A stretch of DNA of 64,000 bases, taken from IMG/VR virus record IMGVR_UViG_3300010430_000003, positions 146,327 to 210,326 of that record; one strand, given 5' to 3'. The translations under genes were made by a program, and so were the position numbers. A model generated the notes under the pieces. It saw only the letters and a program-made list of their open reading frames with translations, had not been told where the DNA came from and searched no databases. This document shows positions 44-63,803 of the stretch, piece by piece (position 1 is the first letter of the stretch; the number at the start of each line of letters is the position of its first letter).

Positions 44-247
44 ATGAATAACAATAGATTGAATATCAATATGGTGATTGCAATCAATATCTGCGCATCA
101 GCAGACATTATGTATTTGAGAGAAAGAAAAGAAAAAGAAGTAAAGCTTAAAGGAAGACTTACAGTGATCAAAGCCCGCATTGCTTCTTTATTGTTATGGA
201 ATCGCTGTCGCTATTTCCATAGGCAATTCCCAGTTGATCATGAATAA
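44..247 (+). CDS. MNIN-family micro-ORF
   Basis: MNNNRLNINMVIAINI; C-terminus RYFHRQFPVDHE resembles those of the next two ORFs. Confidence 0.65.
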   Translation: MNNNRLNINMVIAINICASADIMYLRERKEKEVKLKGRLTVIKARIASLLLWNRCRYFHRQFPVDHE

Positions 248-467
248 CAATTCAATCAACATGTTCATTGCCGCTCATATCATTTCAAGCATTGATATAT
301 ATTACATTAAGCAGATAGGAGAGTTTATATACCCCAGAGGACATATCAACTCACAGAGATTCATATATTATAGAGAATATATACATCAAACTTGTCGAGC
401 CTTCGCCAAAATATATCCAATGGACTCAGAAAGGTCTAACATGTTCGACGAAGTAACAGTGCAATGA
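240..467 (+). CDS. MNIN-family micro-ORF (GEFIYPR subgroup)
   Basis: ATG at 240, MNNNSINMFIAAHII; clear paralog of 464-661. Confidence 0.75.
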   Translation: MNNNSINMFIAAHIISSIDIYYIKQIGEFIYPRGHINSQRFIYYREYIHQTCRAFAKIYPMDSERSNMFDEVTVQ

Positions 468-661
468 ATGATTCAAATATCAATATGTTCATCGGTTTTC
501 ATGTCTTTTCAGACACAAATATATATCACGTTGTTCGGATGGGGGAGTTTATCTATCCTAGAAGAAAAGCATACTCATATAGATTCTCATTTTATAAAGA
601 ATATGTATGGCAAGCAACGCGACGCTTCGCATCATCATATCCAATACAATGCCATGAATAA
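464..661 (+). CDS. MNIN-family micro-ORF (GEFIYPR subgroup)
   Basis: MNDSNINMFIGFHVF; ATGA overlap with upstream paralog. Confidence 0.75.
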   Translation: MNDSNINMFIGFHVFSDTNIYHVVRMGEFIYPRRKAYSYRFSFYKEYVWQATRRFASSYPIQCHE

Positions 662-950
662 TTCAGAAATCAATATTGAAATATGCAACAACTTCGTTTC
701 AAGAGCAAGCAATGGTTCTATAAGATTCTATATGCATAGAAGTTCAATGTATTATAGATTATATGGGTATCAGGTAAGAACGAACAAAATAACTATCTAT
801 ACAAGAATATTCTTTCAACCAATAATGAAGTATATGATGGAAGAGCATCCAACGGTTATTAAGCAGGATGCGGAATCACAGTATATACGGTGGAAGATGT
901 GGAAACTGACAGAGCGAGCAGAGAGGATTCTAAGAAAGTCATTCATTTAG
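654..950 (+). CDS. MNIN-family micro-ORF
   Basis: ATG at 654, MNNSEINIEICNNFV; overlaps upstream stop. Confidence 0.65.
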   Translation: MNNSEINIEICNNFVSRASNGSIRFYMHRSSMYYRLYGYQVRTNKITIYTRIFFQPIMKYMMEEHPTVIKQDAESQYIRWKMWKLTERAERILRKSFI

Positions 951-1085
951 ATAAGGGTTTATCTATAAGGTAGTGTGGAATGGATTGTGTGGGTGTGTGC
1001 TTGGTTAGAAGGGAACGACCGGAGGGAGTGTAGTAGTTGATTCTAGCACTGTAACTCAGGAACAAAGTAACTAGGAATAACAGAG

Positions 1086-1283
1086 ATGAAAAGAGACATA
1101 ATTAATCAAATAATAGCACAAACATTATTCGTAACCCACATTCAAGAAGTGTGGAAATATAGACTAACTTATCATAGAGGAACATATAAATATTATGAAG
1201 GGTTAGGTGATATCCTTCCTTTACCAAGAATAGCAGAAACAGTGTTAATTGATAAAGCCTCACACCTCAGAAGAAAACCATGA
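1086..1283 (+). CDS. MNIN-family micro-ORF
   Basis: MKRDIINQIIAQTLF. Confidence 0.6.
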   Translation: MKRDIINQIIAQTLFVTHIQEVWKYRLTYHRGTYKYYEGLGDILPLPRIAETVLIDKASHLRRKP

Positions 1284-1450
1284 TTGATACAATTGTAAAC
1301 TGTCATATTGGGGCATTGATATCATATCAGTTTTCGAGATCGCACATATTGCATGGCGATCTCCCCAGACCCAGATTAACACTATCCAGTTATTTTAATG
1401 TTAAGAGCAGAAGAAGCATGGGGTATCAATGGTTAGTGAGAGAATTATGA
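1280..1450 (+). CDS. MNIN-family micro-ORF (56 aa, not in ORF track)
   Basis: Hand-translated MIDTIVNCHIGALISYQ...WLVREL; ATGA overlaps at both ends. Confidence 0.55.
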   Translation: MIDTIVNCHIGALISYQFSRSHILHGDLPRPRLTLSSYFNVKSRRSMGYQWLVREL

Positions 1451-1611
1451 ACATTAATATCCAGATAATGAGTTTTATGGTTAGAGAGTTCTTCTTCTAT
1501 CCAAACACTGTGGTCTTTGAAAGATATGTATATTATGACTATGCAGATGTATTGGCATTCTATCAAATAGATATTAAAGATACTTTGATTAAGTATAGGA
1601 AATTAATGTGA
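1447..1611 (+). CDS. MNIN-family micro-ORF
   Basis: MNINIQIMSFMVREFFF; ATGA overlap. Confidence 0.65.
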   Translation: MNINIQIMSFMVREFFFYPNTVVFERYVYYDYADVLAFYQIDIKDTLIKYRKLM

Positions 1612-1781
1612 ATGTTGAGATAGCAATACGGTTTCTTGAACCACTAACAGATGCTACCATGTTTTTGAATAGTGCTAGCACACGATATTCATTATCAGAG
1701 CCTTGCCACTCAATAAGATCAGAGGAGGTGAGATTTTTTAAGAAAAGCTTGAAATATTACTATGAAGTGCAACAACAATGA
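1608..1781 (+). CDS. MNIN-family-like micro-ORF (57 aa, not in ORF track)
   Basis: GTG start, MNVEIAIRFLEPL...YYYEVQQQ; GTGA/ATGA overlaps. Confidence 0.5.
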   Translation: MNVEIAIRFLEPLTDATMFLNSASTRYSLSEPCHSIRSEEVRFFKKSLKYYYEVQQQ

Positions 1782-1954
1782 ATATTAACATTATGATAGC
1801 AAACTGTTGGTTGGGGCCATTCACATATTCCAGTATGTATTTGAACAATTGTTATAAGAAATATAGCATTATTCGTTATGGATCTGCCATCGCTGGACGC
1901 TTCTTAAGAGAGGTTAGATATCATTTAAATAACCTTTTGATAGCTGATAAATGA
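1778..1954 (+). CDS. MNIN-family micro-ORF (58 aa, not in ORF track)
   Basis: Hand-translated MNINIMIANCWLGPF...LLIADK; ATGA overlaps at both ends. Confidence 0.65.
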   Translation: MNINIMIANCWLGPFTYSSMYLNNCYKKYSIIRYGSAIAGRFLREVRYHLNNLLIADK

Positions 1955-2200: not shown

Positions 2201-2557
2201 ATGAAAAAGATATTAAAGAGCAAACAGAAAGGCGTTCATTATTCCAATCATAAGAGCACATATGAAGAAATCATAACATTAGTGGCCATTGATGTAAGCC
2301 ATGCAAACATTAATCTATTGATAACAGAGAAGTTCTTTAAATCAATGATCAATAATGGATCACTGTTTACTTCAAAGTTATTTCGTCCGCCCTATCCAAG
2401 ATATAATCCAGCTGCTATCATGAGACATCATAGTTATGCTTGGGCTTGGCAAACAATTATTAATGAGAATGTGCTACTTAATGTGCATTCCTGCGCCAGA
2501 ACAAATATTAACTATTTGCATAGGTTAGGAATTAATCAGAATTTATCTCATTGTTAA
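2201..2557 (+). CDS. hypothetical protein with internal MNIN-like motif
   Basis: Internal ANINLLITEKFF at about aa 35-46. Confidence 0.45.
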   Translation: MKKILKSKQKGVHYSNHKSTYEEIITLVAIDVSHANINLLITEKFFKSMINNGSLFTSKLFRPPYPRYNPAAIMRHHSYAWAWQTIINENVLLNVHSCARTNINYLHRLGINQNLSHC

Positions 2558-2711
2558 AAATCCATAGTTCCAAATGATATTGATATTCATTATCAAAATG
2601 TTTTTTCAGAAACCTCGAATCCTTTTTGAATTCCGCGCATCTTGCGCGCTCCTTAGATCACCCGAATCAAAACTGTGGCATTGATACCACGCAAATAAAA
2701 TGAGAATGACC

Positions 2712-2847
2712 GAAACCTTTTTGAGTTTCGAGACTCTTAACCTTGAAGCCGCGAAACACCGCACAAACACTGACCGAAACGGAGTGCAGAAAAAACGGAG
2801 AAAGTTAGAAACCTTTTCGAGTTTCGAGCACCTTAACACTGAGACCG
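2712..2847. repeat. two 40-bp imperfect direct repeats, each with an internal GAAAC-N8-GTTTC inverted repeat
   Basis: 2712-2751 GAAACCTTTTTGAGTTTCGAGACTCTTAACCTTGAAGCCG vs 2808-2847 GAAACCTTTTCGAGTTTCGAGCACCTTAACACTGAGACCG (32/40 identical); partial third copy at 2621-2635. Confidence 0.8.
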
Positions 2848-2913
2848 AGGGAACACGTTCCGAGGCTCAACAACCGCACAGGCTGCCAAGCCTACCAAAC
2901 AACGAGGTAAATC

Positions 2914-3561
2914 ATGGGAAAGAAGAACGAAGAGACGACCGAAGAGACGCCGAGCAACATGGAGCGCATTTCTTCTGCGCTGGCCCTGCTGGAGAACGTA
3001 CAGCCTCCTGCGACGTCAGACGAAGTCAAGTCGATCAAGGCCGAGTCCGATAAGCTGAGCAAGGCGCGTGAGGCGCTGAGCGCTGCTGGTCTCGACACTG
3101 ACGCGGTCGATGCGAAGATCGCGGAACTCGGCGAAGCGGAAGCGAAAGCGGACGCGGGTCGCTCGGAACTGGTTGTTGCGCTTGCTCATGTTGAGCGCTT
3201 CACCAAGATTCTGGGTCAACGGTGCTCCGGTGCTAGGGTGGAGAGTGTCCGGGAGAAGTTCGCCGGAATCATCGAGGCCGGAATTCCTGAGTTTCCGGGA
3301 CCGTGTGAAATGAAGACCCTCGCAAGCGGTAAGAAGCGGGCTGTCCACGGTGGACGGGCAACGCAGATCGTTACCGCTCTCCTCTCGATGTCGGAGAATG
3401 GTCGGCTGCGCGTCAGCATCGAAGCCATGGCGGAAGCCCTGCTGGACGTCGACGATACTTTCGGCGACCTCGAAGGTGCTGCCCAGCAGTGTCGCACGGT
3501 ACTTCAGAACTATGCCGACGTGTGGACGTCTGATAGTTCCTTCGTGTTCTCGCAGAATTAG
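2914..3561 (+). CDS. GC-rich hypothetical protein (helical N-terminal half)
   Basis: 215-aa ORF, GAGGT RBS upstream; two sampled lines are 35/60 and 39/60 G+C, against roughly one third elsewhere. Confidence 0.75.
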   Translation: MGKKNEETTEETPSNMERISSALALLENVQPPATSDEVKSIKAESDKLSKAREALSAAGLDTDAVDAKIAELGEAEAKADAGRSELVVALAHVERFTKILGQRCSGARVESVREKFAGIIEAGIPEFPGPCEMKTLASGKKRAVHGGRATQIVTALLSMSENGRLRVSIEAMAEALLDVDDTFGDLEGAAQQCRTVLQNYADVWTSDSSFVFSQN

Positions 3562-3775
3562 CGAGGACATACCCACCACGGGCATAGGGTATCGGGAGTT
3601 AATCAAATCTCCCGGCCCTTTGCCAAACATTCCAAACAAAACAAAAAGATCCATTAACAGGGGGGAGGGGTATCCCCCGGAATGTAAGTCGCCGTTATCC
3701 AAAATCGGCTTGTTCCTCCAACTAAGACCATTCAAAAAACTGCGCACATTATTTCTCAAAATAAGGGGGGAGGGG

Positions 3776-4513
3776 TTAATTGAGAGGTTTGAACAATAGG
3801 GGTTTGAGCTTCTTTAAACTCCTGCGAATTTGTTTCGTGGAGAGTCCTGTAATGTCACGGAGGTTTGCAAGCATTTCCTTTTTATGAGAAAAATCGCATT
3901 CAATGGGGTCATTGAGCCATGATATCAATGTTTTAAGGACTTTTACATGATTTCTCTTATAAGAGGTTATTAACAACGGAGACGACAGCAGGCGAGCTGC
4001 ATTCTGCTTGATGAGCTTCCCCACCTCGGCATTATATACTTGAGTGTGTTGAATGGGCTCTGTTTCAAAGGTATCCACGGATTGATATACAAGACGCTTG
4101 CCCTCCTTAAGCAGCTTTCTGTTCGCTGCCCAAAAGAAATAAATTGCGGATTGTTCAAAATACCGATACATCCTCTTATTCATTTTAATGGTTTGAAATG
4201 CCATAAATAGTTGGGATTTGCAATCTTGCCGATATTCGAATAATTCATTTGATGACGGCTTTATATTCCATCGCACATGTTCTTTTAACACTTGATCAAT
4301 GATTATATCAAAATATTCTTCCAATTGGAAATATAGTTTATTGCGCTTTGAATTTGATGATCTCAAAAATTCAATCACCAATTCATTAAAATTTTGATGA
4401 TCAAGAAACATAACAACTCGTGGACCACCAGTTACTTTAAGAACTGTGTGTTCTGTAAACAATCTTTCTGCTTCATCTGATGAAATAATGCAAAATTTAT
4501 CTTTTGATGGCAT
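3776..4513 (-). CDS. divergent sigma-factor-like / HTH protein, paralog of 62846-63556
   Basis: C-terminus KKEMLANLRDITGLSTKQIRRSLKKLKP aligns to KKAIYLHIRELTGLNTKQITRSIKKLHP. Confidence 0.6.
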   Translation of the reverse strand: MPSKDKFCIISSDEAERLFTEHTVLKVTGGPRVVMFLDHQNFNELVIEFLRSSNSKRNKLYFQLEEYFDIIIDQVLKEHVRWNIKPSSNELFEYRQDCKSQLFMAFQTIKMNKRMYRYFEQSAIYFFWAANRKLLKEGKRLVYQSVDTFETEPIQHTQVYNAEVGKLIKQNAARLLSSPLLITSYKRNHVKVLKTLISWLNDPIECDFSHKKEMLANLRDITGLSTKQIRRSLKKLKPLLFKPLN

Positions 4514-5579: not shown

Positions 5580-5764
5580 TGCTGCTCCAATCTTCGTTGT
5601 TCTCTTAACAATGTCTTAAGAGAATGAATATTATTGGTATTGAAAAGCCTCATATTTATGTGGTAATATGAATGTGGAAAAATAAAATTATCAACCCAGA
5701 AAGGGTTGAGGAAAAATCCAAGCCTTCGCAACATTGCACAATGTATTTTTTGATTGATATTCAT
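5576..5764 (-). CDS. MNIN-family micro-ORF
   Basis: MNINQKIHCAMLRRL. Confidence 0.7.
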   Translation of the reverse strand: MNINQKIHCAMLRRLGFFLNPFWVDNFIFPHSYYHINMRLFNTNNIHSLKTLLREQRRLEQQ

Positions 5765-6006
5765 TAGTAAGGGTAACGTGAAAAGGTTCTATAATTATCA
5801 AAATCAATCTTTTCTTCCATATTCCGCCACCGGGCATCATTCTCATTTCTCATTAATGTTAAATATGAATCCATCCAACCATTTGTGTATCTTGCATTCG
5901 GTTTAATATCATAATATGGTTTTATATAATATAAAGAATCAAAGTGACAACAAATCTGTGCCATCTTTTGTATCATTGCATATTTTATTATAAGATTGAT
6001 ATTCAT
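5764..6006 (-). CDS. MNIN-family micro-ORF
   Basis: MNINLIIKYAMIQKM...GWMDSYLTLMR. Confidence 0.7.
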   Translation of the reverse strand: MNINLIIKYAMIQKMAQICCHFDSLYYIKPYYDIKPNARYTNGWMDSYLTLMRNENDARWRNMEEKIDFDNYRTFSRYPY

Positions 6007-7763: not shown

Positions 7764-7973
7764 TTATGAGGTCGACGTTCGCCGGGCATTCGCGTCTGCA
7801 GCCCTTACACGACATGACAAAATATAGATAGTTCTTTCTAATTCTTGAAATTTAAAATTTTTAATATAATCAGTTCTATCTGCACACAACCTTTTGTGAC
7901 TTATAAAAGAACGAACCCAATTATTATCGATTGATGCAAGAAACATGTGAGTTAAAATCAAATTATGATTCAT
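7764..7973 (-). CDS. MNIN-family micro-ORF
   Basis: MNHNLILTHMFLASID. Confidence 0.55.
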   Translation of the reverse strand: MNHNLILTHMFLASIDNNWVRSFISHKRLCADRTDYIKNFKFQELERTIYILSCRVRAADANARRTSTS

Positions 7974-8727: not shown

Positions 8728-8937
8728 TCAAAGTCCCATGAAGATTTGCAATCTTGATCGTTTATTATGAAGAATCATAGAACAAAAATCACGATAAGCA
8801 TATTTTATTCTAATCTCACGATATGAATGATATTTCTGATAGAAATCCATTTCAACTTGAGTCTTCCATATTACAGGAACTCCTTGAATAACCATATTAT
8901 ACCCAACACACAAATTTATCATTGTATCTTTACACAT
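8728..8937 (-). CDS. MNIN-family micro-ORF
   Basis: MCKDTMINLCVGYNM; compare MNDTMINQYIA at 10178-10390. Confidence 0.55.
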   Translation of the reverse strand: MCKDTMINLCVGYNMVIQGVPVIWKTQVEMDFYQKYHSYREIRIKYAYRDFCSMILHNKRSRLQIFMGL

Positions 8938-9115
8938 TTATATTTTTCAATGTTCGCAAATAAGAAGTGAGCCAATTCTCAACTTTATTGTGATAAAAGA
9001 AGCTAGAACAAAAATATTTTGGCCAATAAAAACTATCCCATGATGTGAATCCGAGCACTTCTATTGTTGTCGTTCTTCTAAGAAAACGATCACGCACAAC
9101 TTTATTAATATCCAT
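8930..9115 (-). CDS. MNIN-family micro-ORF
   Basis: ATG at 9115, MDINKVVRDRFL...WLTSYLRTLK. Confidence 0.65.
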   Translation of the reverse strand: MDINKVVRDRFLRRTTTIEVLGFTSWDSFYWPKYFCSSFFYHNKVENWLTSYLRTLKNINV

Positions 9116-9302
9116 ATTTTTTAAAATGCCTAAAGAAGATTTGAGGACGAAAGCAATTATATTTAAGCATGGATTGATAATTATCATATGAACAGTAAAC
9201 ATCTTTCATTGAATAACATTCCAACGGTTCAAAGGGATAGGTAGGATGCCACCAATACCATATTAATCGGTTAGCAAGAATAGTATTAATATTTGAATTC
9301 AT
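9105..9302 (-). CDS. MNIN-family micro-ORF
   Basis: MNSNINTILANRLIW. Confidence 0.7.
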   Translation of the reverse strand: MNSNINTILANRLIWYWWHPTYPFEPLECYSMKDVYCSYDNYQSMLKYNCFRPQIFFRHFKKYGY

Positions 9303-11093: not shown

Positions 11094-11161
11094 TGATGAA
11101 ACATTTGATGCGAAGATAACACTTGGTTGCTCAATTTTGGAGTAAGAATTTCATGTTAATA

Positions 11162-12648: not shown

Positions 12649-12676
12649 ATTATACTGTTTTCTGTACAGAATTCAA
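12649..12676 (-). promoter_or_regulatory. sigma70-like promoter TTGAAT-N16-TATAAT with palindrome TCTGTACAGA in the spacer
   Basis: Read directly; compare TCTGCACAGA in the 7715-7742 promoter. Confidence 0.6.
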
Positions 12677-12891
12677 GAACAGTATTTTATCAAACGGTGT
12701 AATGTATCGTCTTTAATAATTCTCGCCCACTCGTTTTGGTCTTTAATGTGAATTGAGGCGAACTTAAATCTTGTGTAAGGTCTTACCTTATCACTTTCGA
12801 GATGGGAGAAAATTCCGTAGAACTGGAAGACTTCGGAATAATAAAAATCTGCAAGAATATATCCTCTTGCTATTTGATTGACATTCATCAT
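12673..12891 (-). CDS. MNIN-family micro-ORF
   Basis: MMNVNQIARGYILADF. Confidence 0.65.
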   Translation of the reverse strand: MMNVNQIARGYILADFYYSEVFQFYGIFSHLESDKVRPYTRFKFASIHIKDQNEWARIIKDDTLHRLIKYCS

Positions 12892-31604: not shown

Positions 31605-32426
31605 ATGATCGATAGAGAAAAACTTTTAACAGAAATCAAATTCAGAAAATTCGTTCGAGATCTTCTTGAAGAAAAAGATAAGAAGGAATCTTTCAAAGAA
31701 AAAATGCAAGAAGAGGTGAGGTTTCGAAACTTTGTTCGGCAAGTTTTAACAAAAGAACGAGACACCCAAAAACTCACTGAAGCGAAGACCAAAATCATTC
31801 CTTATGATTCCACTGGCATTGCCATTCTTGCAGATGTGATCAAAAAAGTTATCCCAATTATTAAAGATGATTATTTCTCTCTGACCACAGATATCAAACA
31901 AAGAAAATCATTTCGTGCACACATTGTGAATGCTGTTCGAAATTCCCTCGCTCCAATTAGGAACATCCAAGGGTATCCAGTTGATAACAGTGGTGGAGAT
32001 GGACAATTGCTATCAGCACCAGATATGGTTTCTTCGCCGCATCATCATTATGCTCAATCCGGAAATGGTGCAAATGGACCACATGATACTGGATCAGTCA
32101 ATGAACAGACCGATCTTGAAGACGTTGATCAAGATGGAATCGCTGATAAGGATGATCGGTATATCGATACCGATGATAAGCCGGCAAAAAAAGTTAAATC
32201 CTCTGATGAGGAGGATACTTTCTCTCTTCCGGGTGAAGATGGAACAGGCAGAAACCTTGCCCTCTTAACTTATCGACGAATTGAAAAGGTTATTATTGAC
32301 GGATATCAAACTCTTGATCGCAGAGAAGATCAAGAGGATTTCTACGACTATATTGTGGCAAACTTAAAGATCTATTTTGATCGGTGGGAAGAGGAACTTC
32401 AAAAGGAATTATCAGAACGGTATTAA
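31605..32426 (+). CDS. putative virion protein with repeated LxE segments
   Basis: LLTEIKFRKFVR / MQEEVRFRNFVR internal repeat, LTEAK, VNEQ. Confidence 0.6.
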   Translation: MIDREKLLTEIKFRKFVRDLLEEKDKKESFKEKMQEEVRFRNFVRQVLTKERDTQKLTEAKTKIIPYDSTGIAILADVIKKVIPIIKDDYFSLTTDIKQRKSFRAHIVNAVRNSLAPIRNIQGYPVDNSGGDGQLLSAPDMVSSPHHHYAQSGNGANGPHDTGSVNEQTDLEDVDQDGIADKDDRYIDTDDKPAKKVKSSDEEDTFSLPGEDGTGRNLALLTYRRIEKVIIDGYQTLDRREDQEDFYDYIVANLKIYFDRWEEELQKELSERY

Positions 32427-32686
32427 GACAATTTTACTGATCTGTTAAATGTTCTCCGTAATCCAAATATTAGTTCGTAATGGGTATAGTTGGCGTGGAA
32501 AAAACTACATTTCCAACTATGAACCGATATGTTCGTCGACAGTTTATCTGATTTAGCATGTATCATTATACAATTACTAATCAATAAATTGATAAATTGA
32601 TTATCATTAGGATCAATTACATATCCTCTAATTTTGGTCTTCAAATGATAATGGTACATGGTATTTAACGAAGCATTGAATTCCAA
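32423..32686 (-). CDS. MNIN-family-like ORF with internal motif
   Basis: ...NQFINLLISNCIMI. Confidence 0.45.
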   Translation of the reverse strand: MEFNASLNTMYHYHLKTKIRGYVIDPNDNQFINLLISNCIMIHAKSDKLSTNISVHSWKCSFFHANYTHYELIFGLRRTFNRSVKLS

Positions 32687-32807: not shown

Positions 32808-33038
32808 TCATCCCGCTCCTCTTTTAATTTCTCTTAAATCCAAAAGACACACCCACAAAAGAAAATTCTCTATACAATATTCTCCAAAAACAATCAATTC
32901 TTCATGTTCGTAAGATTCTATCACAGATTGTTTGGGGTCTATTTCCCATATTTTGGGGTTATTAATATCAACAGTGAAGTTTTGATTATATTGAAGAACA
33001 AAACTAGCCTTCACCATTTTATTAACAAATGAATTCAT
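32808..33038 (-). CDS. MNIN-family micro-ORF (KAxFVxQ subgroup)
   Basis: MNSFVNKMVKASFVLQY. Confidence 0.7.
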   Translation of the reverse strand: MNSFVNKMVKASFVLQYNQNFTVDINNPKIWEIDPKQSVIESYEHEELIVFGEYCIENFLLWVCLLDLREIKRGAG

Positions 33039-33247
33039 TTATGTTCATTGGAGAATGATAAGTAGTAGTAGTTTACATCTTCTATACATCCAGAAATAAC
33101 ATGTTTTGAATATTCAAGTATAGATGCCATACTTGAATATAGCGCTACGGAATAGTGCTTTCCTGGTATGGACGTCCATAAGAACCGACCATGTTGACGA
33201 ACAAAGCCAGCTTTAATCAGATTATTTATTGTTGAATGTGAATTCAT
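33035..33247 (-). CDS. MNIN-family micro-ORF (KAxFVxQ subgroup)
   Basis: MNSHSTINNLIKAGFVRQH; the A of ATG is the tRNA discriminator base. Confidence 0.7.
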   Translation of the reverse strand: MNSHSTINNLIKAGFVRQHGRFLWTSIPGKHYSVALYSSMASILEYSKHVISGCIEDVNYYYLSFSNEHK

Positions 33248-41882: not shown

Positions 41883-42724
41883 AACTTTTATATATAGCTG
41901 ACTTCTTTTATCCTGAATCATTGGGGGGTGCCGAACAGTCTGATTTTGAACTTTTGAACATTCTTGCTGATGAAGGTTTTTTGATCAATAAAATTCGTTC
42001 AACAGATTTATCAGAAGAACAAGTTGAAAAGCACAAAGACGAACTTTGGTTTATCTCGAATTTTATGGGTTTGAGAAAGGTGGTAAAAGATTCAATTGTT
42101 GAATTGGTCAAGGATTATGTTATTGTCGAACATGACCACAAGTATCTCTATCACCGAGATCCCTCACCCCATCCAGATTATACTGCTCCCAAGCATGAAT
42201 TAGTTAATGTTGAATTATATCAGGGTGCAAAATATATTATAGTTCAGTCGAACCTTCATGACGAGATCATTCACAAAAATCTTGACAATATAACAACATA
42301 TAAGGTTGGTGGAAATCTTTGGACAGATGAATTACTGGAAAAAATAAAATCTCTGCCACCACCCCCCGATAATGGTGTAGCTTCCATTATGGTATCTGGC
42401 ATTGATCACAAGAATACCAAAGGCGCAGTTAGATATTGTCAGCACAAAGATATCGATTATGAATTGATAAGTCCTTGTGCTCCTGAATTGTTTTTTGAGA
42501 TGATTTCCAAAAATGAATATTTCTTGTTTTTGCCACAATGTGTTGAGACTCTTTCAAGGATTGTTGTCGAGGCAAAGATGCTTGGAGTTAAGGTTATAAC
42601 CAACAATAAGATTGGAGCGGCCTCTGAATCTTGGTTTAAAGAACTTCGCGGTGATGATTTGATTGACTATATGATGAATGATAAAAAGGAGGAGATTCGT
42701 GAATTCATCAGAGAGTTATATTAA
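41879..42724 (+). CDS. GT-B-like glycosyltransferase
   Basis: LGGAEQSD; ETLSRIVVEAKMLGVKVI. Confidence 0.75.
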   Translation: MKLLYIADFFYPESLGGAEQSDFELLNILADEGFLINKIRSTDLSEEQVEKHKDELWFISNFMGLRKVVKDSIVELVKDYVIVEHDHKYLYHRDPSPHPDYTAPKHELVNVELYQGAKYIIVQSNLHDEIIHKNLDNITTYKVGGNLWTDELLEKIKSLPPPPDNGVASIMVSGIDHKNTKGAVRYCQHKDIDYELISPCAPELFFEMISKNEYFLFLPQCVETLSRIVVEAKMLGVKVITNNKIGAASESWFKELRGDDLIDYMMNDKKEEIREFIRELY

Positions 42725-42965
42725 TCTTTTTTTAATGAATAAGCTTTATAGTTGTTTTTCACGGAGTACAACATATGAACAAGTTCATTTCATAAGTATG
42801 AATGGCTGTCCCCATCTACTTGGGGTTCTCCCGAATCTTTACGCACGCCTTAGAGATTACGGAGTGAAGATAAAATCCTCTTTTGCTCTTTTAAATATGA
42901 AAGGAAGTAATCTTCCACGGCATATTCAAAAATTCAAGGAAGAAATGAGGAGTTTATGTGATTAA
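42699..42965 (+). CDS. MNIN-family micro-ORF
   Basis: GTG at 42699, MNSSESYINLFLMNKLY; upstream GT stop lies inside ATT AAT. Confidence 0.6.
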   Translation: MNSSESYINLFLMNKLYSCFSRSTTYEQVHFISMNGCPHLLGVLPNLYARLRDYGVKIKSSFALLNMKGSNLPRHIQKFKEEMRSLCD

Positions 42966-47192: not shown

Positions 47193-47479
47193 TTAAAAAA
47201 CTTAAATATTACTGTAGGTATCATTATACCAATCATACCAATCCTGGATTAATAGACAGAATTTATCTAAAAATAATGTTTAAGATTCTCTCTAAAGAAA
47301 TTGAAAGAATGATAGATGACGGAGAGAGAGTTCCTGAATCTTTTTGGAAAAGATTATATTTCTATAACGAGAAGAGCAGAAACTGTAGAATAGGTCTAGT
47401 TTTAGGATTCGCCGGCGGAATAGGTTTAGCATATTTCTGGTTTTTGTATCAAACTTATAAATTATGGACACAAACCTGA
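47168..47479 (+). CDS. hypothetical protein with C-terminal TM
   Basis: IGLVLGFAGGIGLAYFWF. Confidence 0.5.
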   Translation: MQTIREHLVKKLKYYCRYHYTNHTNPGLIDRIYLKIMFKILSKEIERMIDDGERVPESFWKRLYFYNEKSRNCRIGLVLGFAGGIGLAYFWFLYQTYKLWTQT

Positions 47480-47709
47480 TGAAGAATGTAAATCAAATCA
47501 TTAGGATTTGCTTATTAGATGCAATGCCATGGCCGACGAGATCACCGCTGAATATTGATGGAGCGCTTCCATTAGTTACTGAGTGTACAAAGACTGCGAG
47601 TTTTATTTCTGGCAGTGGTTTGGATATAGTGTTGTATACGAGATATGTGCCGATTATAACGGAATATAAAAGATACTTGAAAGTGTGGTGGACACAAGGA
47701 AAACAATGA
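47479..47709 (+). CDS. MNIN-family micro-ORF
   Basis: ATG at 47479 (TGATG overlap), MKNVNQIIRICLL. Confidence 0.6.
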   Translation: MKNVNQIIRICLLDAMPWPTRSPLNIDGALPLVTECTKTASFISGSGLDIVLYTRYVPIITEYKRYLKVWWTQGKQ

Positions 47710-55545: not shown

Positions 55546-56763
55546 GTGAAGAAGATACATGATTTGAATACAATACGTGGATGGCATTATGAGGGTAAGA
55601 AAAGACTTTCCCGCAAGAAGCGTAAAATCATTGCCATGATTCCTGCCCGTTTAGGCTCACAGAGAATCCCAAAAAAGAATGTTAGATATCTTCACAACAA
55701 ACCATTAGTACAGTGGATTATTGATGCTGCTAAAGAATCTGGTATTTTTGATGAAATCTGGCTTAACACTGAAGATGATGGGTTGTTAGCTAAGATTGCC
55801 AAAGAATCAGACATCAAATTCTATTTGCGGGATATCAGCCTAGCAACTGATGGCGCAACCAACGATCAATTCTTAATGGACTTTGTTAAATCACGAAAAC
55901 TAAGAGATGAAGATTATATTGTTCAACTGCTTCCAACCTCACCTTTTATTAAGCCTGAAACTATTTCTGATTTCACAGAAGAATTGTTGGCAGTTGATAC
56001 GTTGATTTCTGTTGTCGAACACAAAATTGAATGTCTTAATTCTAAAATGGAGCCATTGAATTTCGATGTTCTTGATGACACTCTCCCTTCTCAGGATCTG
56101 AGACCTGTTTATTCATATGCGTGTGGGCTAATGGGGTGGAATGTTCTTTCATTAAAAGAAATTTATAATGAGGGTTGTTCTCCATATCACTCATATCATT
56201 CAAGAAAGGAAGTCTTCATTCTTGGGAATGAAGAGGCAATTGATGTTGACACTGAATCAGATTTTCAATTTGCGGAAAGTGTTGCTATGTCAATGCATTA
56301 TGATGAAATTAAGCCTCGATATTATGGAGAATATTCATCTGTTGAATATGATGTGAAACCTCTTCTTGAAAAAGACGGCATTAAAAGAACAGAAGCTTGG
56401 ACAACATCACCGTCAGTATTAAAACGGGTTAATGTGACAAGGATGGTGGAAGCGATGCCTGATTCATACGCTAAAACTCTTGTGAACTCTCCGTTCAATA
56501 GTGCAACTCTGATCCGGCAGAATGACGGGGAAGGAAATAGAAAACACTCACATAGTAACTGGGCTGAATGGTGGTTGATTCAGGAAGGTAAATGTGTGTT
56601 TGAATATTGGGAAAAAGAGAATAGAAGCTCACGAGCAATGGTATTGATTACTGGCGACCTGCTATACATCCCAGCAGGCATAGAACATAAGATCACCGCG
56701 AAGGGTGGGCCATGCACAAGATTGGCTGTATCTCGTTATGATGTGGCACATTTTTATAAATGA
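55546..56763 (+). CDS. acylneuraminate-type cytidylyltransferase (NeuA/KdsB-like) fused to a C-terminal cupin
   Basis: IPARLGSQRIPKKN, LLPTSPF, IDVDTESDF; HSHSNWAEWW...GDLLYIPAGIEH. Confidence 0.85.
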   Translation: MKKIHDLNTIRGWHYEGKKRLSRKKRKIIAMIPARLGSQRIPKKNVRYLHNKPLVQWIIDAAKESGIFDEIWLNTEDDGLLAKIAKESDIKFYLRDISLATDGATNDQFLMDFVKSRKLRDEDYIVQLLPTSPFIKPETISDFTEELLAVDTLISVVEHKIECLNSKMEPLNFDVLDDTLPSQDLRPVYSYACGLMGWNVLSLKEIYNEGCSPYHSYHSRKEVFILGNEEAIDVDTESDFQFAESVAMSMHYDEIKPRYYGEYSSVEYDVKPLLEKDGIKRTEAWTTSPSVLKRVNVTRMVEAMPDSYAKTLVNSPFNSATLIRQNDGEGNRKHSHSNWAEWWLIQEGKCVFEYWEKENRSSRAMVLITGDLLYIPAGIEHKITAKGGPCTRLAVSRYDVAHFYK

Positions 56764-56957
56764 CTGGTTTGATTAATTTAATAGTTAGACAAAAATTCGT
56801 TTATTCTATTAACGTGAGAGAAAATGGGTGGCCTCTCTCTCGTCATAATTGGGATTATCGAGAGTTTGACGATTATGAAGTATATTATGATATCTCTAAT
56901 GTTAAAATGTGGAAAGTGATCATTAAACAGAAGATTCATTCATATGAATTATCATGA
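56760..56957 (+). CDS. MNIN-family micro-ORF
   Basis: MTGLINLIVRQKFV; ATGA overlap. Confidence 0.65.
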   Translation: MTGLINLIVRQKFVYSINVRENGWPLSRHNWDYREFDDYEVYYDISNVKMWKVIIKQKIHSYELS

Positions 56958-57133
56958 ATATCAACCTTTCCATAGCTGAAAAGATTCTATATACCTACTC
57001 ACCATGGCCCTCTCACTACTATTATTTTTGTTATGATGCTGATGATTTTTCAAGAATAGGAACATTTGATAGTTTTCGACATAGTAGAGTTAGAGTCTAT
57101 AATCACCTACAATTAATGAAACGTTATGTATAA
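56954..57133 (+). CDS. MNIN-family micro-ORF (59 aa, not in ORF track)
   Basis: Hand-translated MNINLSIAEKILYTY...QLMKRYV; overlaps both neighbours. Confidence 0.7.
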   Translation: MNINLSIAEKILYTYSPWPSHYYYFCYDADDFSRIGTFDSFRHSRVRVYNHLQLMKRYV

Positions 57134-58911: not shown

Positions 58912-59482
58912 GTTAGATTTAGATAACATGGAACAAAAATTTCATGACTGTCTTGAGACAGAAGATTGGGCGCGTTTTGTTGAGATGTTTAAAGCCGCTA
59001 CAGAAATTTATATTATTGGAAATGGTGGACAAGCATCCACAGCGCAACATGCAGCCTCAGACACAACTCGTTTAGTTGATAACAAGATTATTCGCTCTTT
59101 TGATAACATGAGTTATCTTACGTCTGTTGCTAATGATTATGGATATGAAACAGTCTTCCAACGTTGGATTGAGAAAGAAATCGGAAACACTTCTAGAGAT
59201 AAAGTGATGGTTATTGGTTTATCTTGTTCTGGCAACTCTCCTAACATTGTTGATGTTTTGGAATGGGCTGATCATCAGGGAATTAAAAGCGCCCTAATTT
59301 CAGGCACAAAATCGGTCAAGCTATCTCCACACATTAATGAAGTATGTATGTATACAAAGTACTTTCATTCATCAGAGCTTATTTCAATGCTTTTGATTTA
59401 TGAAGCTATTGGTGAGTGCGGTGGTCGATGCCCAACATTAGTTGAAGAAAATATTCGCAAGGGTTTTGATACGGATGAATAG
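58904..59482 (+). CDS. SIS-domain sugar phosphate isomerase (GmhA-like)
   Basis: IGNGGQASTAQH, LTSVANDYGY, SCSGNSPNI. Confidence 0.85.
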   Translation: MSKLDLDNMEQKFHDCLETEDWARFVEMFKAATEIYIIGNGGQASTAQHAASDTTRLVDNKIIRSFDNMSYLTSVANDYGYETVFQRWIEKEIGNTSRDKVMVIGLSCSGNSPNIVDVLEWADHQGIKSALISGTKSVKLSPHINEVCMYTKYFHSSELISMLLIYEAIGECGGRCPTLVEENIRKGFDTDE

Positions 59483-59690
59483 AATTCTTAGTGTTGATAA
59501 GAATCTTATTCTTGCTGACCGTTTTTTAGCAAATATTATTGAGGAAGATGATTTATTCTTCTCTATGATAATGCAGAAAGGCAGGGGCAGTGTTGCAGAA
59601 TATGATTTCTGGAATGACACAAAACAGTTTCATCATTTTTTGAAGATTGAGAGTGAATATAAAAGGAGATATCTCGATGTCTATTTATAA
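59442..59690 (+). CDS. hypothetical ORF
   Basis: Fills the gap between the SIS gene and fcl. Confidence 0.4.
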   Translation: MKKIFARVLIRMNRILSVDKNLILADRFLANIIEEDDLFFSMIMQKGRGSVAEYDFWNDTKQFHHFLKIESEYKRRYLDVYL

Positions 59691-61730: not shown

Positions 61731-61920
61731 TTTATGTATTAAAACTCATTTTTGTTATGCGGTATCAATAAGATTCTATAGTTCGTTTAAATATCGACTT
61801 TCCAATGTTAATAGTAAAATTATCACAAGACATACTTTTCAAAGAAACTATCACTTTTATGCTCATGAAGAAGAAATGATGAATTCCGTGCTTTCGCTAA
61901 TGAAAAAACATAAAACATAA
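61708..61920 (+). CDS. MNIN-family micro-ORF
   Basis: TTG at 61708, MKHPSLINLCIKTHF; gmd stop lies inside ATT AAT. Confidence 0.6.
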   Translation: MKHPSLINLCIKTHFCYAVSIRFYSSFKYRLSNVNSKIITRHTFQRNYHFYAHEEEMMNSVLSLMKKHKT

Positions 61921-61931
61921 AGCTTTTACAA

Positions 61932-62120
61932 ATGAAACAGAACTCTTTGATTAATATGAAACTAAGAAATATCATTTATAAATGGTTTTTATTTGAAGAT
62001 TTATTTGAATCACACCCAACACTTTATTGTAGAGATTCTTATACAAACAAAACAAATGGACGATATTTATTTATATCTGACTGTACAATCAAAATTAAAA
62101 AAATGATGAGGAAAATATGA
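61932..62120 (+). CDS. MNIN-family micro-ORF
   Basis: MKQNSLINMKLRNII. Confidence 0.6.
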   Translation: MKQNSLINMKLRNIIYKWFLFEDLFESHPTLYCRDSYTNKTNGRYLFISDCTIKIKKMMRKI

Positions 62121-62302
62121 AATTATCAGAACAAGCTACAATGACTATCGCAGTAATTCTTATGAAGTCATTAACAGAAGAAGCAAACGTGCAAGACTTA
62201 CTTGAAGAGCTTGACTTTGTTGAAGAGGAGGATGGGCAATTATATTGCACCAATCCACCAGTATCAATCAAGATGGGTGATGAAGAAAATGCCGACTTAT
62301 GA
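62117..62302 (+). CDS. small acidic conserved-looking protein
   Basis: MKLSEQA...LYCTNPP. Confidence 0.6.
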   Translation: MKLSEQATMTIAVILMKSLTEEANVQDLLEELDFVEEEDGQLYCTNPPVSIKMGDEENADL

Positions 62303-62528
62303 TTATTTTTGTGAATCCTGTCAAAAAAAATTTACTCTTAGACATTCTGTAAAAGAGGAAGTTAATGAGTGTAAGATTTGTCATGGAGAAATTAATAAGA
62401 TTGTTAACTTCTCTAACATTACAATATCTAAGAAGAATGAGAATCCTTCTAGTGAAAGTTTGAAAGAAGCTGAAAGAGACTTAAAAGAACTTAAAAAAGA
62501 AATTAAGAGAAAAAATAATGAGTTATGA
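62289..62528 (+). CDS. FmdB-family zinc-ribbon protein
   Basis: MPTYDYFCESC...CKIC. Confidence 0.85.
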   Translation: MPTYDYFCESCQKKFTLRHSVKEEVNECKICHGEINKIVNFSNITISKKNENPSSESLKEAERDLKELKKEIKRKNNEL

Positions 62529-62862
62529 ATTGATGTTTGGAGCGGTAATTGTTTCTGTAATATTGCTGTTTTTGTTTTTGTGTGTTGTCTTAATAATTTG
62601 CTTTATAGCAATTGGCGTTTTATTTAAGCGCTATGATTCACTTTATAAAGAGTATGAACAGTTTGTATCTGATACAGATGTATACGAAGATATTGAATCT
62701 GTTAGGGAGTCTGCTGGTGAACTTCATGAACATTGTGAAGTTATGCGAGGTGCGATTGAACACAGTGAAGAGATCTTATATCTAAATTTCAAGAATCATC
62801 TTGAAAGATTTTTATTCCAACTTCAAGTTATAAGAAATATTGGAGATGACGAAGTTGGTTAA
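62518..62862 (+). CDS. single-TM membrane protein
   Basis: N-terminal 30-aa hydrophobic stretch. Confidence 0.6.
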   Translation: MSYELMFGAVIVSVILLFLFLCVVLIICFIAIGVLFKRYDSLYKEYEQFVSDTDVYEDIESVRESAGELHEHCEVMRGAIEHSEEILYLNFKNHLERFLFQLQVIRNIGDDEVG

Positions 62863-63556
62863 AAAGAAAAAGAAAAAGAATTATTACTTTACACAAGATC
62901 ATGAAGATGCAATTGTAGAGTATGCACAGATTGAAGATGTAAAACGTCGAACTGAACTTTATATTGATTTTATTGAACCTGTATTTGAAGAATTAATTAA
63001 TAATATAATCTATACATTTAAATTTCAAGACTTACCAAACGTTGATTCTCTAAAAAATGAATGCAAAATCTGGGTTACAACAATCTTAGATAAGTTTGAC
63101 CCCGAAAAGGGCTCTGCAGCATTTGCCTTTTTTACTGTGGTTATAAAGAATTGGTTTATTGCACAGGTGAAGACGCGCAAGAAGAAGCTCCAGACCGAGA
63201 CCTCTTATGAAGATATTCAGGAGTTATTAGAACATCAATTAATTGTTGAAAATGAATATGAAACTTCAAGAGAGCATCGTGAATACATAACTTTTTTGAA
63301 GCAAGAAATAGACAGTTGGGATAAAGGTTGTCGAAAGAATGTTCTAGGGCATAATGATATAAAAGTCATTCATGCCCTTCAAGACTTATTTGATAGGGCA
63401 GACAGTATTGAAATCTTTAACAAGAAAGCGATATATCTCCACATTAGAGAATTAACAGGACTTAACACAAAACAAATTACACGATCAATTAAGAAATTGC
63501 ACCCAAGGTATGAAAAATTTAAGAAAGGATGGATTAGTGGTGAATTTGAATCTTAA
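62846..63556 (+). CDS. phage sigma-factor-like protein
   Basis: Region-2-like DKFDPEKGSAAFAFFTVVIKNWF; C-terminal HTH. Confidence 0.7.
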   Translation: MTKLVKKKKKKNYYFTQDHEDAIVEYAQIEDVKRRTELYIDFIEPVFEELINNIIYTFKFQDLPNVDSLKNECKIWVTTILDKFDPEKGSAAFAFFTVVIKNWFIAQVKTRKKKLQTETSYEDIQELLEHQLIVENEYETSREHREYITFLKQEIDSWDKGCRKNVLGHNDIKVIHALQDLFDRADSIEIFNKKAIYLHIRELTGLNTKQITRSIKKLHPRYEKFKKGWISGEFES

Positions 63557-63803
63557 AATAAAAGACTCATATTTCATATCTATTTCTGTTCCTCAAACTG
63601 GTGGCTATGGTTTTACTCCAAAAATATATTCATATGAATATGAAGAGAGGGTGAGCGCTCAACATAATCAAGGCTTCCCTTTAATATATTATGGTTTAAG
63701 AACTAATCCTTGGCTTTTAAATGTTGGTGAATATGATTTATGGTCGTTAACTTCTACATCGCAAATATATGAGAATATACTATGGCTCAACAAGAATCAA
63801 TAG
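63540..63803 (+). CDS. MNIN-family micro-ORF
   Basis: GTG at 63540, MNLNLKIKDSYFISI; overlaps both neighbours. Confidence 0.55.
   Translation: MNLNLKIKDSYFISISVPQTGGYGFTPKIYSYEYEERVSAQHNQGFPLIYYGLRTNPWLLNVGEYDLWSLTSTSQIYENILWLNKNQ

What the first reader, a model, noticed from the sequence alone, without database searches (positions are those of the whole stretch)
44..63803. A dispersed family of roughly 45-50 micro-ORFs with a shared N-terminal (I/V/L)N-x-x-(I/V) motif ('MNIN family')
Seen: many 55-100-aa ORFs on both strands, always co-oriented with their neighbours, begin MNIN, MNSNIN, MNNIN, MINxx, MDIN or similar. This is followed by a predicted amphipathic helix (N-x-x-I/V-x-x-x-F/Y/I-L/I). 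Their bodies are rich in Y/F/W/H/R/N and poor in A/G/E compared with the enzyme genes. The motif uses synonymous codons (ATC AAT, ATT AAC, ATA AAT, GTA AAC, GTG AAT), which points to protein-level conservation. Several members under 60 aa are missing from the ORF track (1280, 1608, 1778, 7963, 56954). Inference: this is a greatly expanded microprotein family with a common N-terminal docking or targeting helix and hypervariable C-termini, for example an arsenal of anti-defence or host-takeover peptides, or a selfish mini-gene that spreads into operon junctions. I know of no named family with this pattern.
Basis: partly seen in the sequence, partly recalled or inferred. Interest (0 to 1): 0.92.

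Follow-up and report, generated by a model that had tools for sequence, protein, structure and literature searches.

The report
Expanded orphan microprotein family in phage
An uncultivated ~210-kb phage carries about 47 copies in this window, and about 80 in the 113 kb examined, of one previously unseen family of ~65-residue proteins; they share only a short hydrophobic N-terminal helix and sit between conserved genes, an unusually large gene-family expansion for a phage, and its function is unknown.

Summary
The window is the last 64 kb of a 210,326-bp viral metagenome contig. About half of its small genes (43 of 88 tiled ORFs of 45-140 aa, against 2-2.5% expected by chance) begin with Phi-N-x-x-Phi-(A)-x-x-Phi-Phi. 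I curated 47 members: 27 are individually significant by leave-one-out HMM and about 20 are probable. Wobble positions are free, so the constraint is on the protein. The bodies have diverged almost to randomness but keep a weak residual similarity. They are basic (median pI 9.2) and rich in Tyr, Arg, His and Trp. The family continues upstream of the window (about 30-35 more in 49 kb). It is absent from about 700 kb of related phages' loci. It has no match in Pfam, PHROGs, NCBIfam, PADLOC, PDB, BFVD or 1.84 billion representative proteins. Upstream of the window, members fill junctions between conserved genes (e.g. DnaE-dUTPase) that are directly adjacent in relatives; in the window they overlap their neighbours' starts and stops. 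The helix is hydrophobic, not amphipathic. No mobile-element signatures were found. Function remains inferred; my best guess is diversified binder or host-interaction proteins built on a buried N-terminal helix. This is a new variant of a lineage-specific expansion.

The parts
44..247 (+). member, 67 aa (probable)
   Evidence: N-terminal motif; LOO HMM 5.7 bits; body similar to 240-467
240..467 (+). member, 75 aa
   Evidence: LOO 7.0 bits; body 50 bits to 464-661; AF2 model helix-hairpin-helix
464..661 (+). member, 65 aa
   Evidence: LOO 8.0 bits; tandem paralog of 240-467, dN/dS 0.68
654..950 (+). member, 98 aa (internal ATG of ORF 468-950)
   Evidence: LOO 6.8 bits
1086..1283 (+). member, 65 aa
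   Evidence: LOO 6.6 bits
1280..1450 (+). weak candidate, 56 aa
   Evidence: motif present by regex, LOO 0.5 bits
1447..1611 (+). member, 54 aa (internal ATG of ORF 1429-1611)
   Evidence: LOO 12.2 bits
1608..1781 (+). member, 57 aa, GTG start (probable)
   Evidence: LOO 5.3 bits; similar to 1778-1954
1778..1954 (+). member, 58 aa
   Evidence: LOO 18.0 bits
1951..2136 (+). member, 61 aa
   Evidence: LOO 17.7 bits; same protein on 7 contigs from several samples
2282..2557 (+). candidate, start uncertain (ORF 2201-2557)
   Evidence: internal motif, LOO 3.7 bits
5027..5233 (-). candidate, 68 aa, TTG start
   Evidence: LOO 4.7 bits
5576..5764 (-). member, 62 aa
   Evidence: LOO 9.1 bits
5764..6006 (-). 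member, 80 aa
   Evidence: LOO 9.3 bits; body 27.7 bits to 12402-12629
7764..7973 (-). candidate, 69 aa
   Evidence: LOO 4.1 bits
7963..8130 (-). member, 55 aa, GTG start
   Evidence: LOO 8.7 bits
8728..8937 (-). candidate, 69 aa
   Evidence: LOO 4.5 bits
8930..9115 (-). candidate, 61 aa (internal ATG of ORF 8930-9202)
   Evidence: LOO 5.0 bits
9105..9302 (-). member, 65 aa
   Evidence: LOO 12.5 bits
9286..9534 (-). member, 82 aa
   Evidence: LOO 10.8 bits
9541..9762 (-). candidate, 73 aa, motif 14 residues in
   Evidence: LOO 4.3 bits
10178..10390 (-). member, 70 aa
   Evidence: LOO 10.1 bits
12149..12409 (-). weak candidate, 86 aa
   Evidence: LOO 2.2 bits
12402..12629 (-). member, 75 aa
   Evidence: LOO 6.8 bits; body homolog of 5764-6006
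12673..12891 (-). weak candidate, 72 aa
   Evidence: LOO 1.8 bits
12888..13094 (-). candidate, 68 aa
   Evidence: LOO 4.9 bits
13537..13956 (-). member with long body, 139 aa
   Evidence: LOO 6.2 bits
13953..14147 (-). member, 64 aa
   Evidence: LOO 7.2 bits
15885..16115 (-). member, 76 aa
   Evidence: LOO 11.0 bits
16102..16305 (-). member, 67 aa
   Evidence: LOO 9.6 bits
16302..16508 (-). member, 68 aa (internal ATG of ORF 16302-16595)
   Evidence: LOO 10.3 bits
17099..17326 (-). member, 75 aa
   Evidence: LOO 14.0 bits
17926..18171 (-). member, 81 aa
   Evidence: LOO 8.6 bits
18933..19157 (-). member, 74 aa
   Evidence: LOO 7.9 bits
19138..19353 (-). member, 71 aa
   Evidence: LOO 11.8 bits; AF2 model mostly helical, pLDDT 69.7
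32423..32617 (-). member, start uncertain (ORF 32423-32686)
   Evidence: LOO 6.6 bits
32808..33038 (-). candidate, 76 aa
   Evidence: LOO 5.3 bits; weak similarity to 33035-33247 and 56760-56957
33035..33247 (-). weak candidate, 70 aa; its ATG shares a base with the 3' end of tRNA-Met
   Evidence: LOO 2.4 bits; tRNA at 33247-33330
42678..42965 (+). weak candidate in sugar cluster, 95 aa
   Evidence: LOO 3.3 bits
42958..43203 (+). weak candidate in sugar cluster, 81 aa, GTG start
   Evidence: LOO 2.3 bits
46033..46263 (+). candidate in the sugar/nucleotide cluster, 76 aa: after an 87-aa ORF that follows the adenylosuccinate synthetase gene, and before a 310-aa gene
   Evidence: strict motif; LOO 2.7 bits; 40.5 bits to full-length family profile
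47464..47709 (+). member in sugar cluster, 81 aa
   Evidence: LOO 10.1 bits
56760..56957 (+). member between cytidylyltransferase-cupin and aminotransferase genes, 65 aa
   Evidence: LOO 9.8 bits; 4-nt overlaps with both neighbours
56954..57133 (+). member, 59 aa
   Evidence: LOO 12.0 bits
59475..59690 (+). weak candidate, 71 aa (internal ATG of ORF 59442-59690)
   Evidence: LOO 2.9 bits
61696..61920 (+). candidate, 74 aa
   Evidence: LOO 4.2 bits
61932..62120 (+). weak candidate, 62 aa
   Evidence: LOO 1.4 bits

Best explanation
SHOWN. This is a lineage-specific, genome-wide expansion of one fast-evolving family of small proteins in an uncultivated ~210-kb phage. Members are 54-139 aa (median 68), mostly basic, and rich in Tyr, Arg, His and Trp. 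Purifying selection at the protein level keeps only a 10-12-residue hydrophobic N-terminal helix, Phi-N-x-x-Phi-(A)-x-x-Phi-Phi, with an invariant Asn. The bodies have drifted almost to randomness. The genes sit as intact ORFs that overlap their neighbours' starts and stops. Upstream of the window they fill junctions between conserved genes that are adjacent in relatives.

INFERRED. They are accessory proteins that work by binding. The buried N-terminal helix is the common element: either the folding core of a small helix-hairpin-helix domain, or a peg that enters one shared partner. The variable aromatic and basic surfaces give each copy a different target, such as host-takeover or counter-defence targets or nucleic acids. 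Copies arose by duplication (some are still tandem) and relocation into gene junctions, and they diversified quickly.
For: - Family is real and exceeds chance.
- Constraint is at the protein level: 3-periodic information with free wobble positions.
- Members look like coding genes: synonymous codon usage correlates with large genes at r = 0.89, and the annotated frame scores best in 46 of 47. ORFs tile with 4-nt overlaps.
- Bodies alone keep weak similarity: mean best hit 20.5 bits against 17.7 +/- 0.3 for shuffles, and 5 pairs at 25 bits or more against 0.05. This points to common descent, not shuffling of an N-terminal module.
- Evolution is fast: dN/dS 0.68 for the closest pair at dS 0.68.
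- Members are basic, with Tyr, Arg, His and Trp enriched; this differs from off-frame translation.
- The helix is hydrophobic with a low hydrophobic moment, so it is probably buried.
- AF2 predicts an N-terminal helix followed by a hairpin and a long helix, at pLDDT 74.
- The family is absent from relatives and from all libraries searched.
- Members lie in junctions that are closed in relatives.
- Precedent: Bacillus phage G has about 35 copies of a small zinc-ribbon protein, called 'unprecedented' (PMC7824862).
Against: - There is no functional evidence of any kind, no expression data and no identified partner.
- The AF2 models have modest confidence (pTM 0.35 and 0.48) and disagree on the middle of the protein.
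- Dispersal across replication, sugar-biosynthesis and small-gene operons is not what one co-regulated 'arsenal' would show.
- High dN/dS and near-random bodies also fit weak constraint rather than diversifying selection.
- About 20 of the 47 members are not individually significant.
- All sequence comes from one phage population at 99.9% identity, so purifying selection could not be tested on orthologs.
Confidence: 0.4

Rival explanations
1. The N-terminal helix is a targeting signal, like the capsid targeting sequence of T4 internal proteins. It would load many different small basic proteins into the prohead, or another phage compartment, so that they are delivered with the DNA.
For: T-even internal proteins are a diverse set that shares only a conserved N-terminal capsid targeting sequence (PMC3012670). 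Members here are small, mostly basic (median pI 9.2), and conserved only at the N-terminus.
Against: No conserved cleavage motif, such as a fixed Glu, follows the helix. The motif starts 0-14 residues from the Met. Bodies retain traces of common descent. Genes are scattered through replication and sugar operons rather than sitting near head genes. About 80 cargo species would be without precedent.
Confidence: 0.17
2. They are selfish mini-genes that spread into gene junctions (homing-like or addictive) and give the phage no benefit.
For: Members occupy junctions between conserved genes that are adjacent in relatives: the 315-aa gene to DnaE, and DnaE to dUTPase. There are about 80 copies dispersed over 113 kb.
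Against: No direct or inverted DNA repeats were found and no conserved DNA at gene borders. No nuclease or transposase domain is present, and no residues are conserved in the bodies. Copies share no DNA similarity, so there has been no recent spread. All copies are intact and overlap their neighbours' starts and stops, which suggests they are retained by selection.
Confidence: 0.13
3. They are small nucleic-acid-binding proteins, either specific regulators or structural DNA/RNA-binding proteins, expanded in the way the zinc-ribbon family is in Bacillus phage G.
For: Basic pI and an aromatic plus Arg/His-rich composition. Precedent: the phage G expansion was interpreted as transcription factors or structural DNA-binding proteins (PMC7824862).
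Against: No known DNA- or RNA-binding domain is detected by sequence or fold. 10% of members are acidic. Binding surfaces would be expected to show some conserved positions, and none is seen.
Confidence: 0.15
4. They are precursor peptides of modified peptides (RiPP-like): a conserved leader with a hypervariable core.
For: The layout is a conserved N-terminus with a variable C-terminus. Aromatic, His and Arg-rich cores resemble substrates of some cross-linking enzymes (my own knowledge).
Against: No maturase, leader peptidase or exporter was found among the roughly 30 larger window proteins scanned. The 'leader' is only about 12 residues and the 'core' is 45-90. There is no conserved cleavage site. 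Genes are dispersed rather than clustered with an enzyme.
Confidence: 0.03
5. It is an artefact: chance ORFs in AT-rich DNA whose starts look alike because A/T-rich codons are favoured after ATG.
For: Asn and Ile codons are A/T-rich, and N-terminal A-richness is common in AT-rich genomes (my own knowledge).
Against: Shuffles give 0.3-3 hits where 9-50 are seen. The motif extends to positions +8 and +9 and lies at a variable distance from the ATG. 1.03 Mb of other viral DNA and about 700 kb of relatives' loci lack it. ORFs of 55-100 codons tile end to end.
Confidence: 0.02

Closest known systems
Lineage-specific expansion of a small zinc-ribbon protein in Bacillus phage G (about 35 copies; Iyer et al. 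2021, PMC7824862)
   Same: Dozens of paralogs of one small protein in a single jumbo-phage lineage, with unknown function and a suspected role in binding.
   Different: No zinc-ribbon or any other known domain is present. The copy number is higher (47 in 64 kb, about 80 in 113 kb). Only a 10-12-residue N-terminal helix is conserved. Copies are dispersed into junctions between conserved genes.
T-even phage internal proteins sharing a capsid targeting sequence (PMC3012670)
   Same: A short conserved N-terminal element on otherwise diverse, small, basic proteins in a large phage, with a proposed counter-defence role.
   Different: There is no conserved protease cleavage motif after the element. 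There are tens of copies instead of a few. Copies are not in one locus. Bodies show traces of common descent. Packaging is untested.
Multigene families of large eukaryotic DNA viruses, such as the terminal families of asfarviruses and poxviruses (my own knowledge)
   Same: Virus-specific paralog families with many fast-diverging copies, thought to act on the host.
   Different: Those families are larger proteins clustered at genome ends. Here the proteins are microproteins interleaved with core operons of a bacteriophage.
Free-standing homing endonuclease genes of T4-like phages (seg, mob) (my own knowledge)
   Same: Optional genes inserted between conserved genes that are adjacent in relatives.
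   Different: No nuclease domain and no conserved catalytic residues are present. The proteins are 3-4 times smaller. There is no evidence of recent mobility.

Membership tests
Lineage-specific paralog expansion | Many paralogs within one genome that share descent | tested here: met
   47 curated in the window. The N-terminal HMM cross-validates. Bodies alone are more similar than shuffles. Tandem pairs are clearly homologous.
Lineage-specific paralog expansion | Absent or single-copy in related lineages | tested here: met
   No credible hit in about 700 kb of loci from phages that share the AAA ATPase (35-54% identity), the DUF7873 protein (39%) or DnaE (47-53% identity). Only this genome's own proteins are found among 1.84 billion representatives.
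T4-type capsid-targeted internal proteins | Short conserved element at the extreme N-terminus of otherwise diverse small proteins | tested here: met
   The motif starts 0-14 residues from the Met. Bodies are near-random.
T4-type capsid-targeted internal proteins | Conserved prohead-protease cleavage motif right after the targeting element | tested here: not met
   No position from +10 to +29 has a fixed acidic residue; the acidic fraction is 0.21 or less at every position.
T4-type capsid-targeted internal proteins | Presence in the virion | not testable with these tools
   Needs virion proteomics, and the phage is uncultivated.
Free-standing homing endonuclease or mobile mini-element | Nuclease or transposase domain | tested here: not met
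   No Pfam, NCBIfam or PHROGs match in any member. No residues are conserved in the bodies.
Free-standing homing endonuclease or mobile mini-element | Terminal repeats, target-site duplications or a conserved border sequence | tested here: not met
   No repeat family is associated with members. No information at gene borders beyond the start and stop codons.
Free-standing homing endonuclease or mobile mini-element | Insertion between genes that are adjacent in relatives | tested here: met
   The 315-aa gene to DnaE and DnaE to dUTPase junctions are closed in several relatives and hold 3 and 1-2 members here.
RiPP precursor peptides | Cognate modifying enzyme or leader peptidase in the neighbourhood | tested here: not met
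   None among the roughly 30 larger window proteins scanned with Pfam. The rest of the genome was not fully scanned.
Membrane-anchored or secreted small proteins | Transmembrane-length hydrophobic segment or signal peptide | tested here: not met
   Only 1 of 58 members has a 19-residue Kyte-Doolittle window of 1.6 or more.

The most novel reading that the evidence does not exclude
The phage maintains a repertoire of about 80-100 hypervariable microproteins built on one invariant N-terminal helix. This would be a viral 'binder library' whose members are seeded into nearly every operon junction. The seeding mechanism would leave no nuclease, transposase or repeat signature, so it would be a new kind of protein-coding junction-colonising element, or a new class of diversified phage effectors.
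Probability: 0.2. Interest if true: 0.85.

Novelty: new variant of a known kind. Interest (0 to 1): 0.68.

Why it matters
Phage genomes are full of small genes of unknown function, and these are usually treated as unrelated orphans. Here about half of the small genes of a jumbo phage are one family, recognisable only by a 10-residue N-terminal helix. The copy number is more than twice the largest small-protein expansion previously noted for a jumbo phage in the review cited here.

If the helix docks to one partner, a single pull-down could give function to about 80 genes at once. If the copies really colonise gene junctions, the family is a tractable model for how phage accessory genes are born, moved and diversified.

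The result also shows that short N-terminal profiles can link 'orphan' microproteins that full-length searches miss.

Tried and rejected
- **Megablast of 8 kb and 5.8 kb against INPHARED phages:** no match.
- **Family libraries:** scans of all members against Pfam, PHROGs, NCBIfam and PADLOC gave only scattered single hits with E above 0.03, or none.
- **Protein databases:** a word-indexed search of 5.8 billion proteins and a full HMMER search of 1.84 billion representatives with family profiles returned only this genome's own proteins plus one spurious repeat protein.
- **Structure:** a family profile against PDB sequences gave nothing. Foldseek of two AF2 models against PDB and BFVD gave nothing below E = 1.
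- **DNA pattern scan of IMG/VR for the motif:** it returned only single, evidently random matches. I used these as a 1-Mb background control.
- **Other samples:** contigs are 99.9% identical, with only 5 variable sites, so no test of selection on orthologs was possible.
- **Mobile-element and signal scans:** direct repeats, border motifs, and promoter or terminator scans showed nothing tied to members.
- **Membrane-anchor idea:** rejected.
- **Amphipathic-helix idea:** not supported.
- **A passing resemblance of one subfamily's Tyr-rich hairpin to GIY-YIG nucleases:** dropped, because there is no Pfam hit and no conserved catalytic positions.
- **Synteny test inside the window's sugar cluster:** it failed because only the phage itself was retrieved.

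Full report
**Where the window comes from.** The window has 35% G+C and is tightly packed with co-oriented genes. It is identical to the last 64 kb of a 210,326-bp metagenome contig, JGI Ga0118733_100000259, also held as IMG/VR UViG 3300010430_000003; window position 1 is contig position 146,327.
- Window genes include a PhoH-PIN protein, an AAA ATPase, a DUF7873 protein and two tRNAs.
- From about 38 kb onward there is a large sugar-nucleotide and glycosyltransferase cluster.
- Upstream of the window lie a sigma factor, a UvrD helicase, a DnaE-type polymerase, ribonucleotide reductase, dUTPase and a GroEL-like protein.
- This is an uncultivated jumbo phage. It has no close relative in INPHARED.

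- A loose regular expression already picks out about 30 small ORFs. Allowing internal start codons raises this further.
- I curated 47 ORFs that are co-oriented with their neighbours.
- Anchored on the Ile-Asn pair, the motif is Phi(0)-N(1)-x-x-Phi(4)-A/x(5)-x-x-Phi(8)-Phi(9), usually preceded by a polar Asn/Ser/Asp-rich cap. In the 58 members of the window plus 8 kb upstream, position 0 is Ile in 40, position 4 is Ile or Val in 48, and position 5 is Ala in 24. Positions 8 and 9 are 88% hydrophobic.
- The strict motif occurs near the N-terminus of 43 of 88 tiled small ORFs. The chance rate is 2-2.5%.
- An HMM trained on members below 10.4 kb recovers 9 hits of at least 8 bits in the remaining 53.6 kb, against 0.3 in Markov-3 shuffles. 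The HMM trained on all 45 anchored window members finds 10 in the 8 kb upstream of the window, against 0.
- In 1.03 Mb of unrelated viral contigs the density is 0.4 per 10 kb, against 7-12 per 10 kb here.
- Leave-one-out scoring makes 27 window members individually significant at 6 bits or more. About 20 further members rest on motif, position, size and context.

**Protein-level or DNA-level?** Protein-level. Information content around the anchor is 3-periodic and wobble positions carry almost none. Ile is ATT, ATC or ATA; Asn is AAT or AAC; Ala uses all four GCN codons. There is no conserved DNA upstream of the start or around the stop, and there are no DNA repeat families. The distance of the motif from the ATG varies from 0 to 14 residues, so it is not a start-codon context effect.

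**Are these coding genes?**
- The ORFs tile end to end, often with ATGA overlaps.
- Synonymous codon usage of the bodies correlates with that of large genes at r = 0.89. The annotated frame scores best in 46 of 47, although the lack of in-frame stops contributes to that figure.
- The composition is distinctive. Relative to large genes, Tyr is 1.8x, Arg, His and Trp about 1.7x, and Cys 1.6x; Gly, Glu, Asp, Val and Ala are at 0.54-0.71x. It is unlike off-frame translation: Tyr is 8.5% here against 3.0% off-frame.
- Median length is 68 aa and median pI is 9.2; 71% of members have pI above 8.

**One family, or a shared N-terminal module on unrelated bodies?** Pairwise similarity is weak. With the first residues removed, bodies still hit each other better than composition-matched shuffles: mean best hit 20.5 bits against 17.7 +/- 0.3, and five pairs at 25 bits or more against 0.05 expected. 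Clear pairs are partly tandem (240/464) and partly distant (5764/12402). This favours common descent followed by extreme divergence. For the closest pair dS is 0.68 and dN/dS is 0.68, which indicates fast protein evolution; other pairs are saturated.

**Structure.**
- The AF2 model of 240-464, built with the family alignment, gives helix 4-15, a hairpin at 21-23 and 28-30, and helix 40-58 (pLDDT 73.8, pTM 0.48).
- The model of 19141-19353 is mostly helical (pLDDT 69.7, pTM 0.35).
- Neither model matches anything in PDB or BFVD.
- The N-terminal helix is hydrophobic on most faces. Its hydrophobic moment (0.21) is lower than for shuffled residues (0.28). It is not of transmembrane length: only 1 of 58 members passes that test.
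- I read it as a buried helix with a conserved Asn near its start. It is not a surface amphipathic helix.

**Distribution.**
- The family has no match in Pfam, PHROGs, NCBIfam or PADLOC or in PDB sequences.
- Profile searches of 5.8 billion and 1.84 billion protein sets return only this genome's own proteins.
- Loci from relatives sharing the AAA ATPase (35-54% identity), the DUF7873 protein (39%) or DnaE (47-53% identity), about 700 kb in all, have no credible hit.
- Within the phage the family continues upstream of the window, with about 30-35 more candidates in contig positions 97-146 kb, interleaved with replication genes. The total is about 80 in 113 kb.
- The same proteins occur on contigs from several other samples at 99.9% identity, so the phage is a real and recurrent population. 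That identity is too high to test selection on orthologs.

**Junction position.** Relatives conserve the gene order 315-aa gene, DnaE, dUTPase, IMPDH, 116-aa gene.
- In several relatives DnaE and dUTPase are 7-60 bp apart, and the 315-aa gene abuts DnaE.
- In this phage the first junction holds four small genes, three of which carry the motif. The second holds one clear member and one possible member. Another member follows the 116-aa gene.
- In one relative (L033) the homologs of window genes 19808-20128 and 14353-15498 are adjacent. Here they are 4.3 kb apart, with six members and other small genes between them.
- In the window's sugar cluster, members overlap both neighbours by 4-25 nt: 46033, 47464, 56760 and 56954.

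**Interpretation.**
- Shown: an orphan, lineage-specific and very large expansion, with protein-level constraint confined to a short N-terminal helix, fast-diverging basic and aromatic bodies, and residence in gene junctions.
- Inferred, at about 0.4: these are accessory binding proteins. The buried helix would be the common core or peg, and the variable surfaces would provide different specificities.
- The T4 capsid-targeting analogy (PMC3012670) is attractive, but it lacks a cleavage motif and a dedicated locus.
- The selfish-element reading fits the junction pattern but has no mobility signature.
- A role as nucleic-acid-binding regulators, as proposed for the roughly 35-copy zinc-ribbon expansion of phage G (PMC7824862), fits the charge and composition but no known fold.
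- RiPP-precursor and artefact readings are unlikely.

**Verdict.** This is a new variant of a known kind (lineage-specific expansion), of notable size and with an unusual architecture. The function is open and is testable with a few pull-downs and one or two structures.

Noticed in passing
window 33247-33330 (-) and 33035-33247 (-): The ATG of a family candidate shares its first base with the 3' end of tRNA-Met. No room is left for a ribosome-binding site, so the ORF could be translated as a leaderless mRNA after tRNA processing.
   Followed up: partly
window 10850-10918 (-): Rfam finds a second tRNA (41.4 bits, above the gathering score) that ARAGORN did not report.
   Followed up: partly
window 11147-11261 (-): Sub-threshold Rfam match to the Y RNA-like family YrlA (24.2 bits against a gathering score of 69; E 0.01 in a 701-base search), in a G+C-rich stretch without ORFs next to the DUF7873 gene. 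It may be a tRNA-like structured RNA.
   Followed up: partly
window 38653-61730 (+): Large sugar-nucleotide and glycan cluster. It has several GT1/GT4 and GT2 glycosyltransferases, two GT29-like (sialyltransferase-type) genes, a cytidylyltransferase-cupin fusion, two aminotransferases, GDP-mannose dehydratase and epimerases. This suggests a nonulosonic-acid-type pathway encoded by a phage.
   Followed up: partly
window 48914-49654 and 49889-50794 (+): Transketolase-like enzyme split into an N-terminal gene and a C-terminal gene, separated by an 84-aa ORF (49638-49892).
   Followed up: no
window 44684-45772 (+): Phage-encoded adenylosuccinate synthetase (Pfam E 4e-76) inside the sugar cluster.
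   Followed up: no
window 36939-37565 (+): A 208-aa protein with a Pfam match to PF07737 that is below the curated cut-off (23.8 against 27.4 bits). I did not interpret it or pursue it.
   Followed up: no
window 23287-29118 (+): A 1,943-aa protein with no Pfam match. PHROGs hits include a cytidyltransferase-like stretch (residues 346-550). It is followed by an 825-aa protein with no match at all.
   Followed up: no
window 2600-3800: A stretch of 47% G+C in a 35% genome, with long overlapping ORFs on both strands and a repeated peptide motif in 2700-3053. Two of the five sites that vary between samples (2989, 3129) lie here. No Rfam match.
   Followed up: partly
L001:4079-4924, L175:4546-7953 and L174:7954-9561 (contig positions 97-146 kb): Just upstream of the window the phage encodes its own sigma-70-type factor, a DnaE-type polymerase and a GroEL-like chaperonin.
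   Followed up: no
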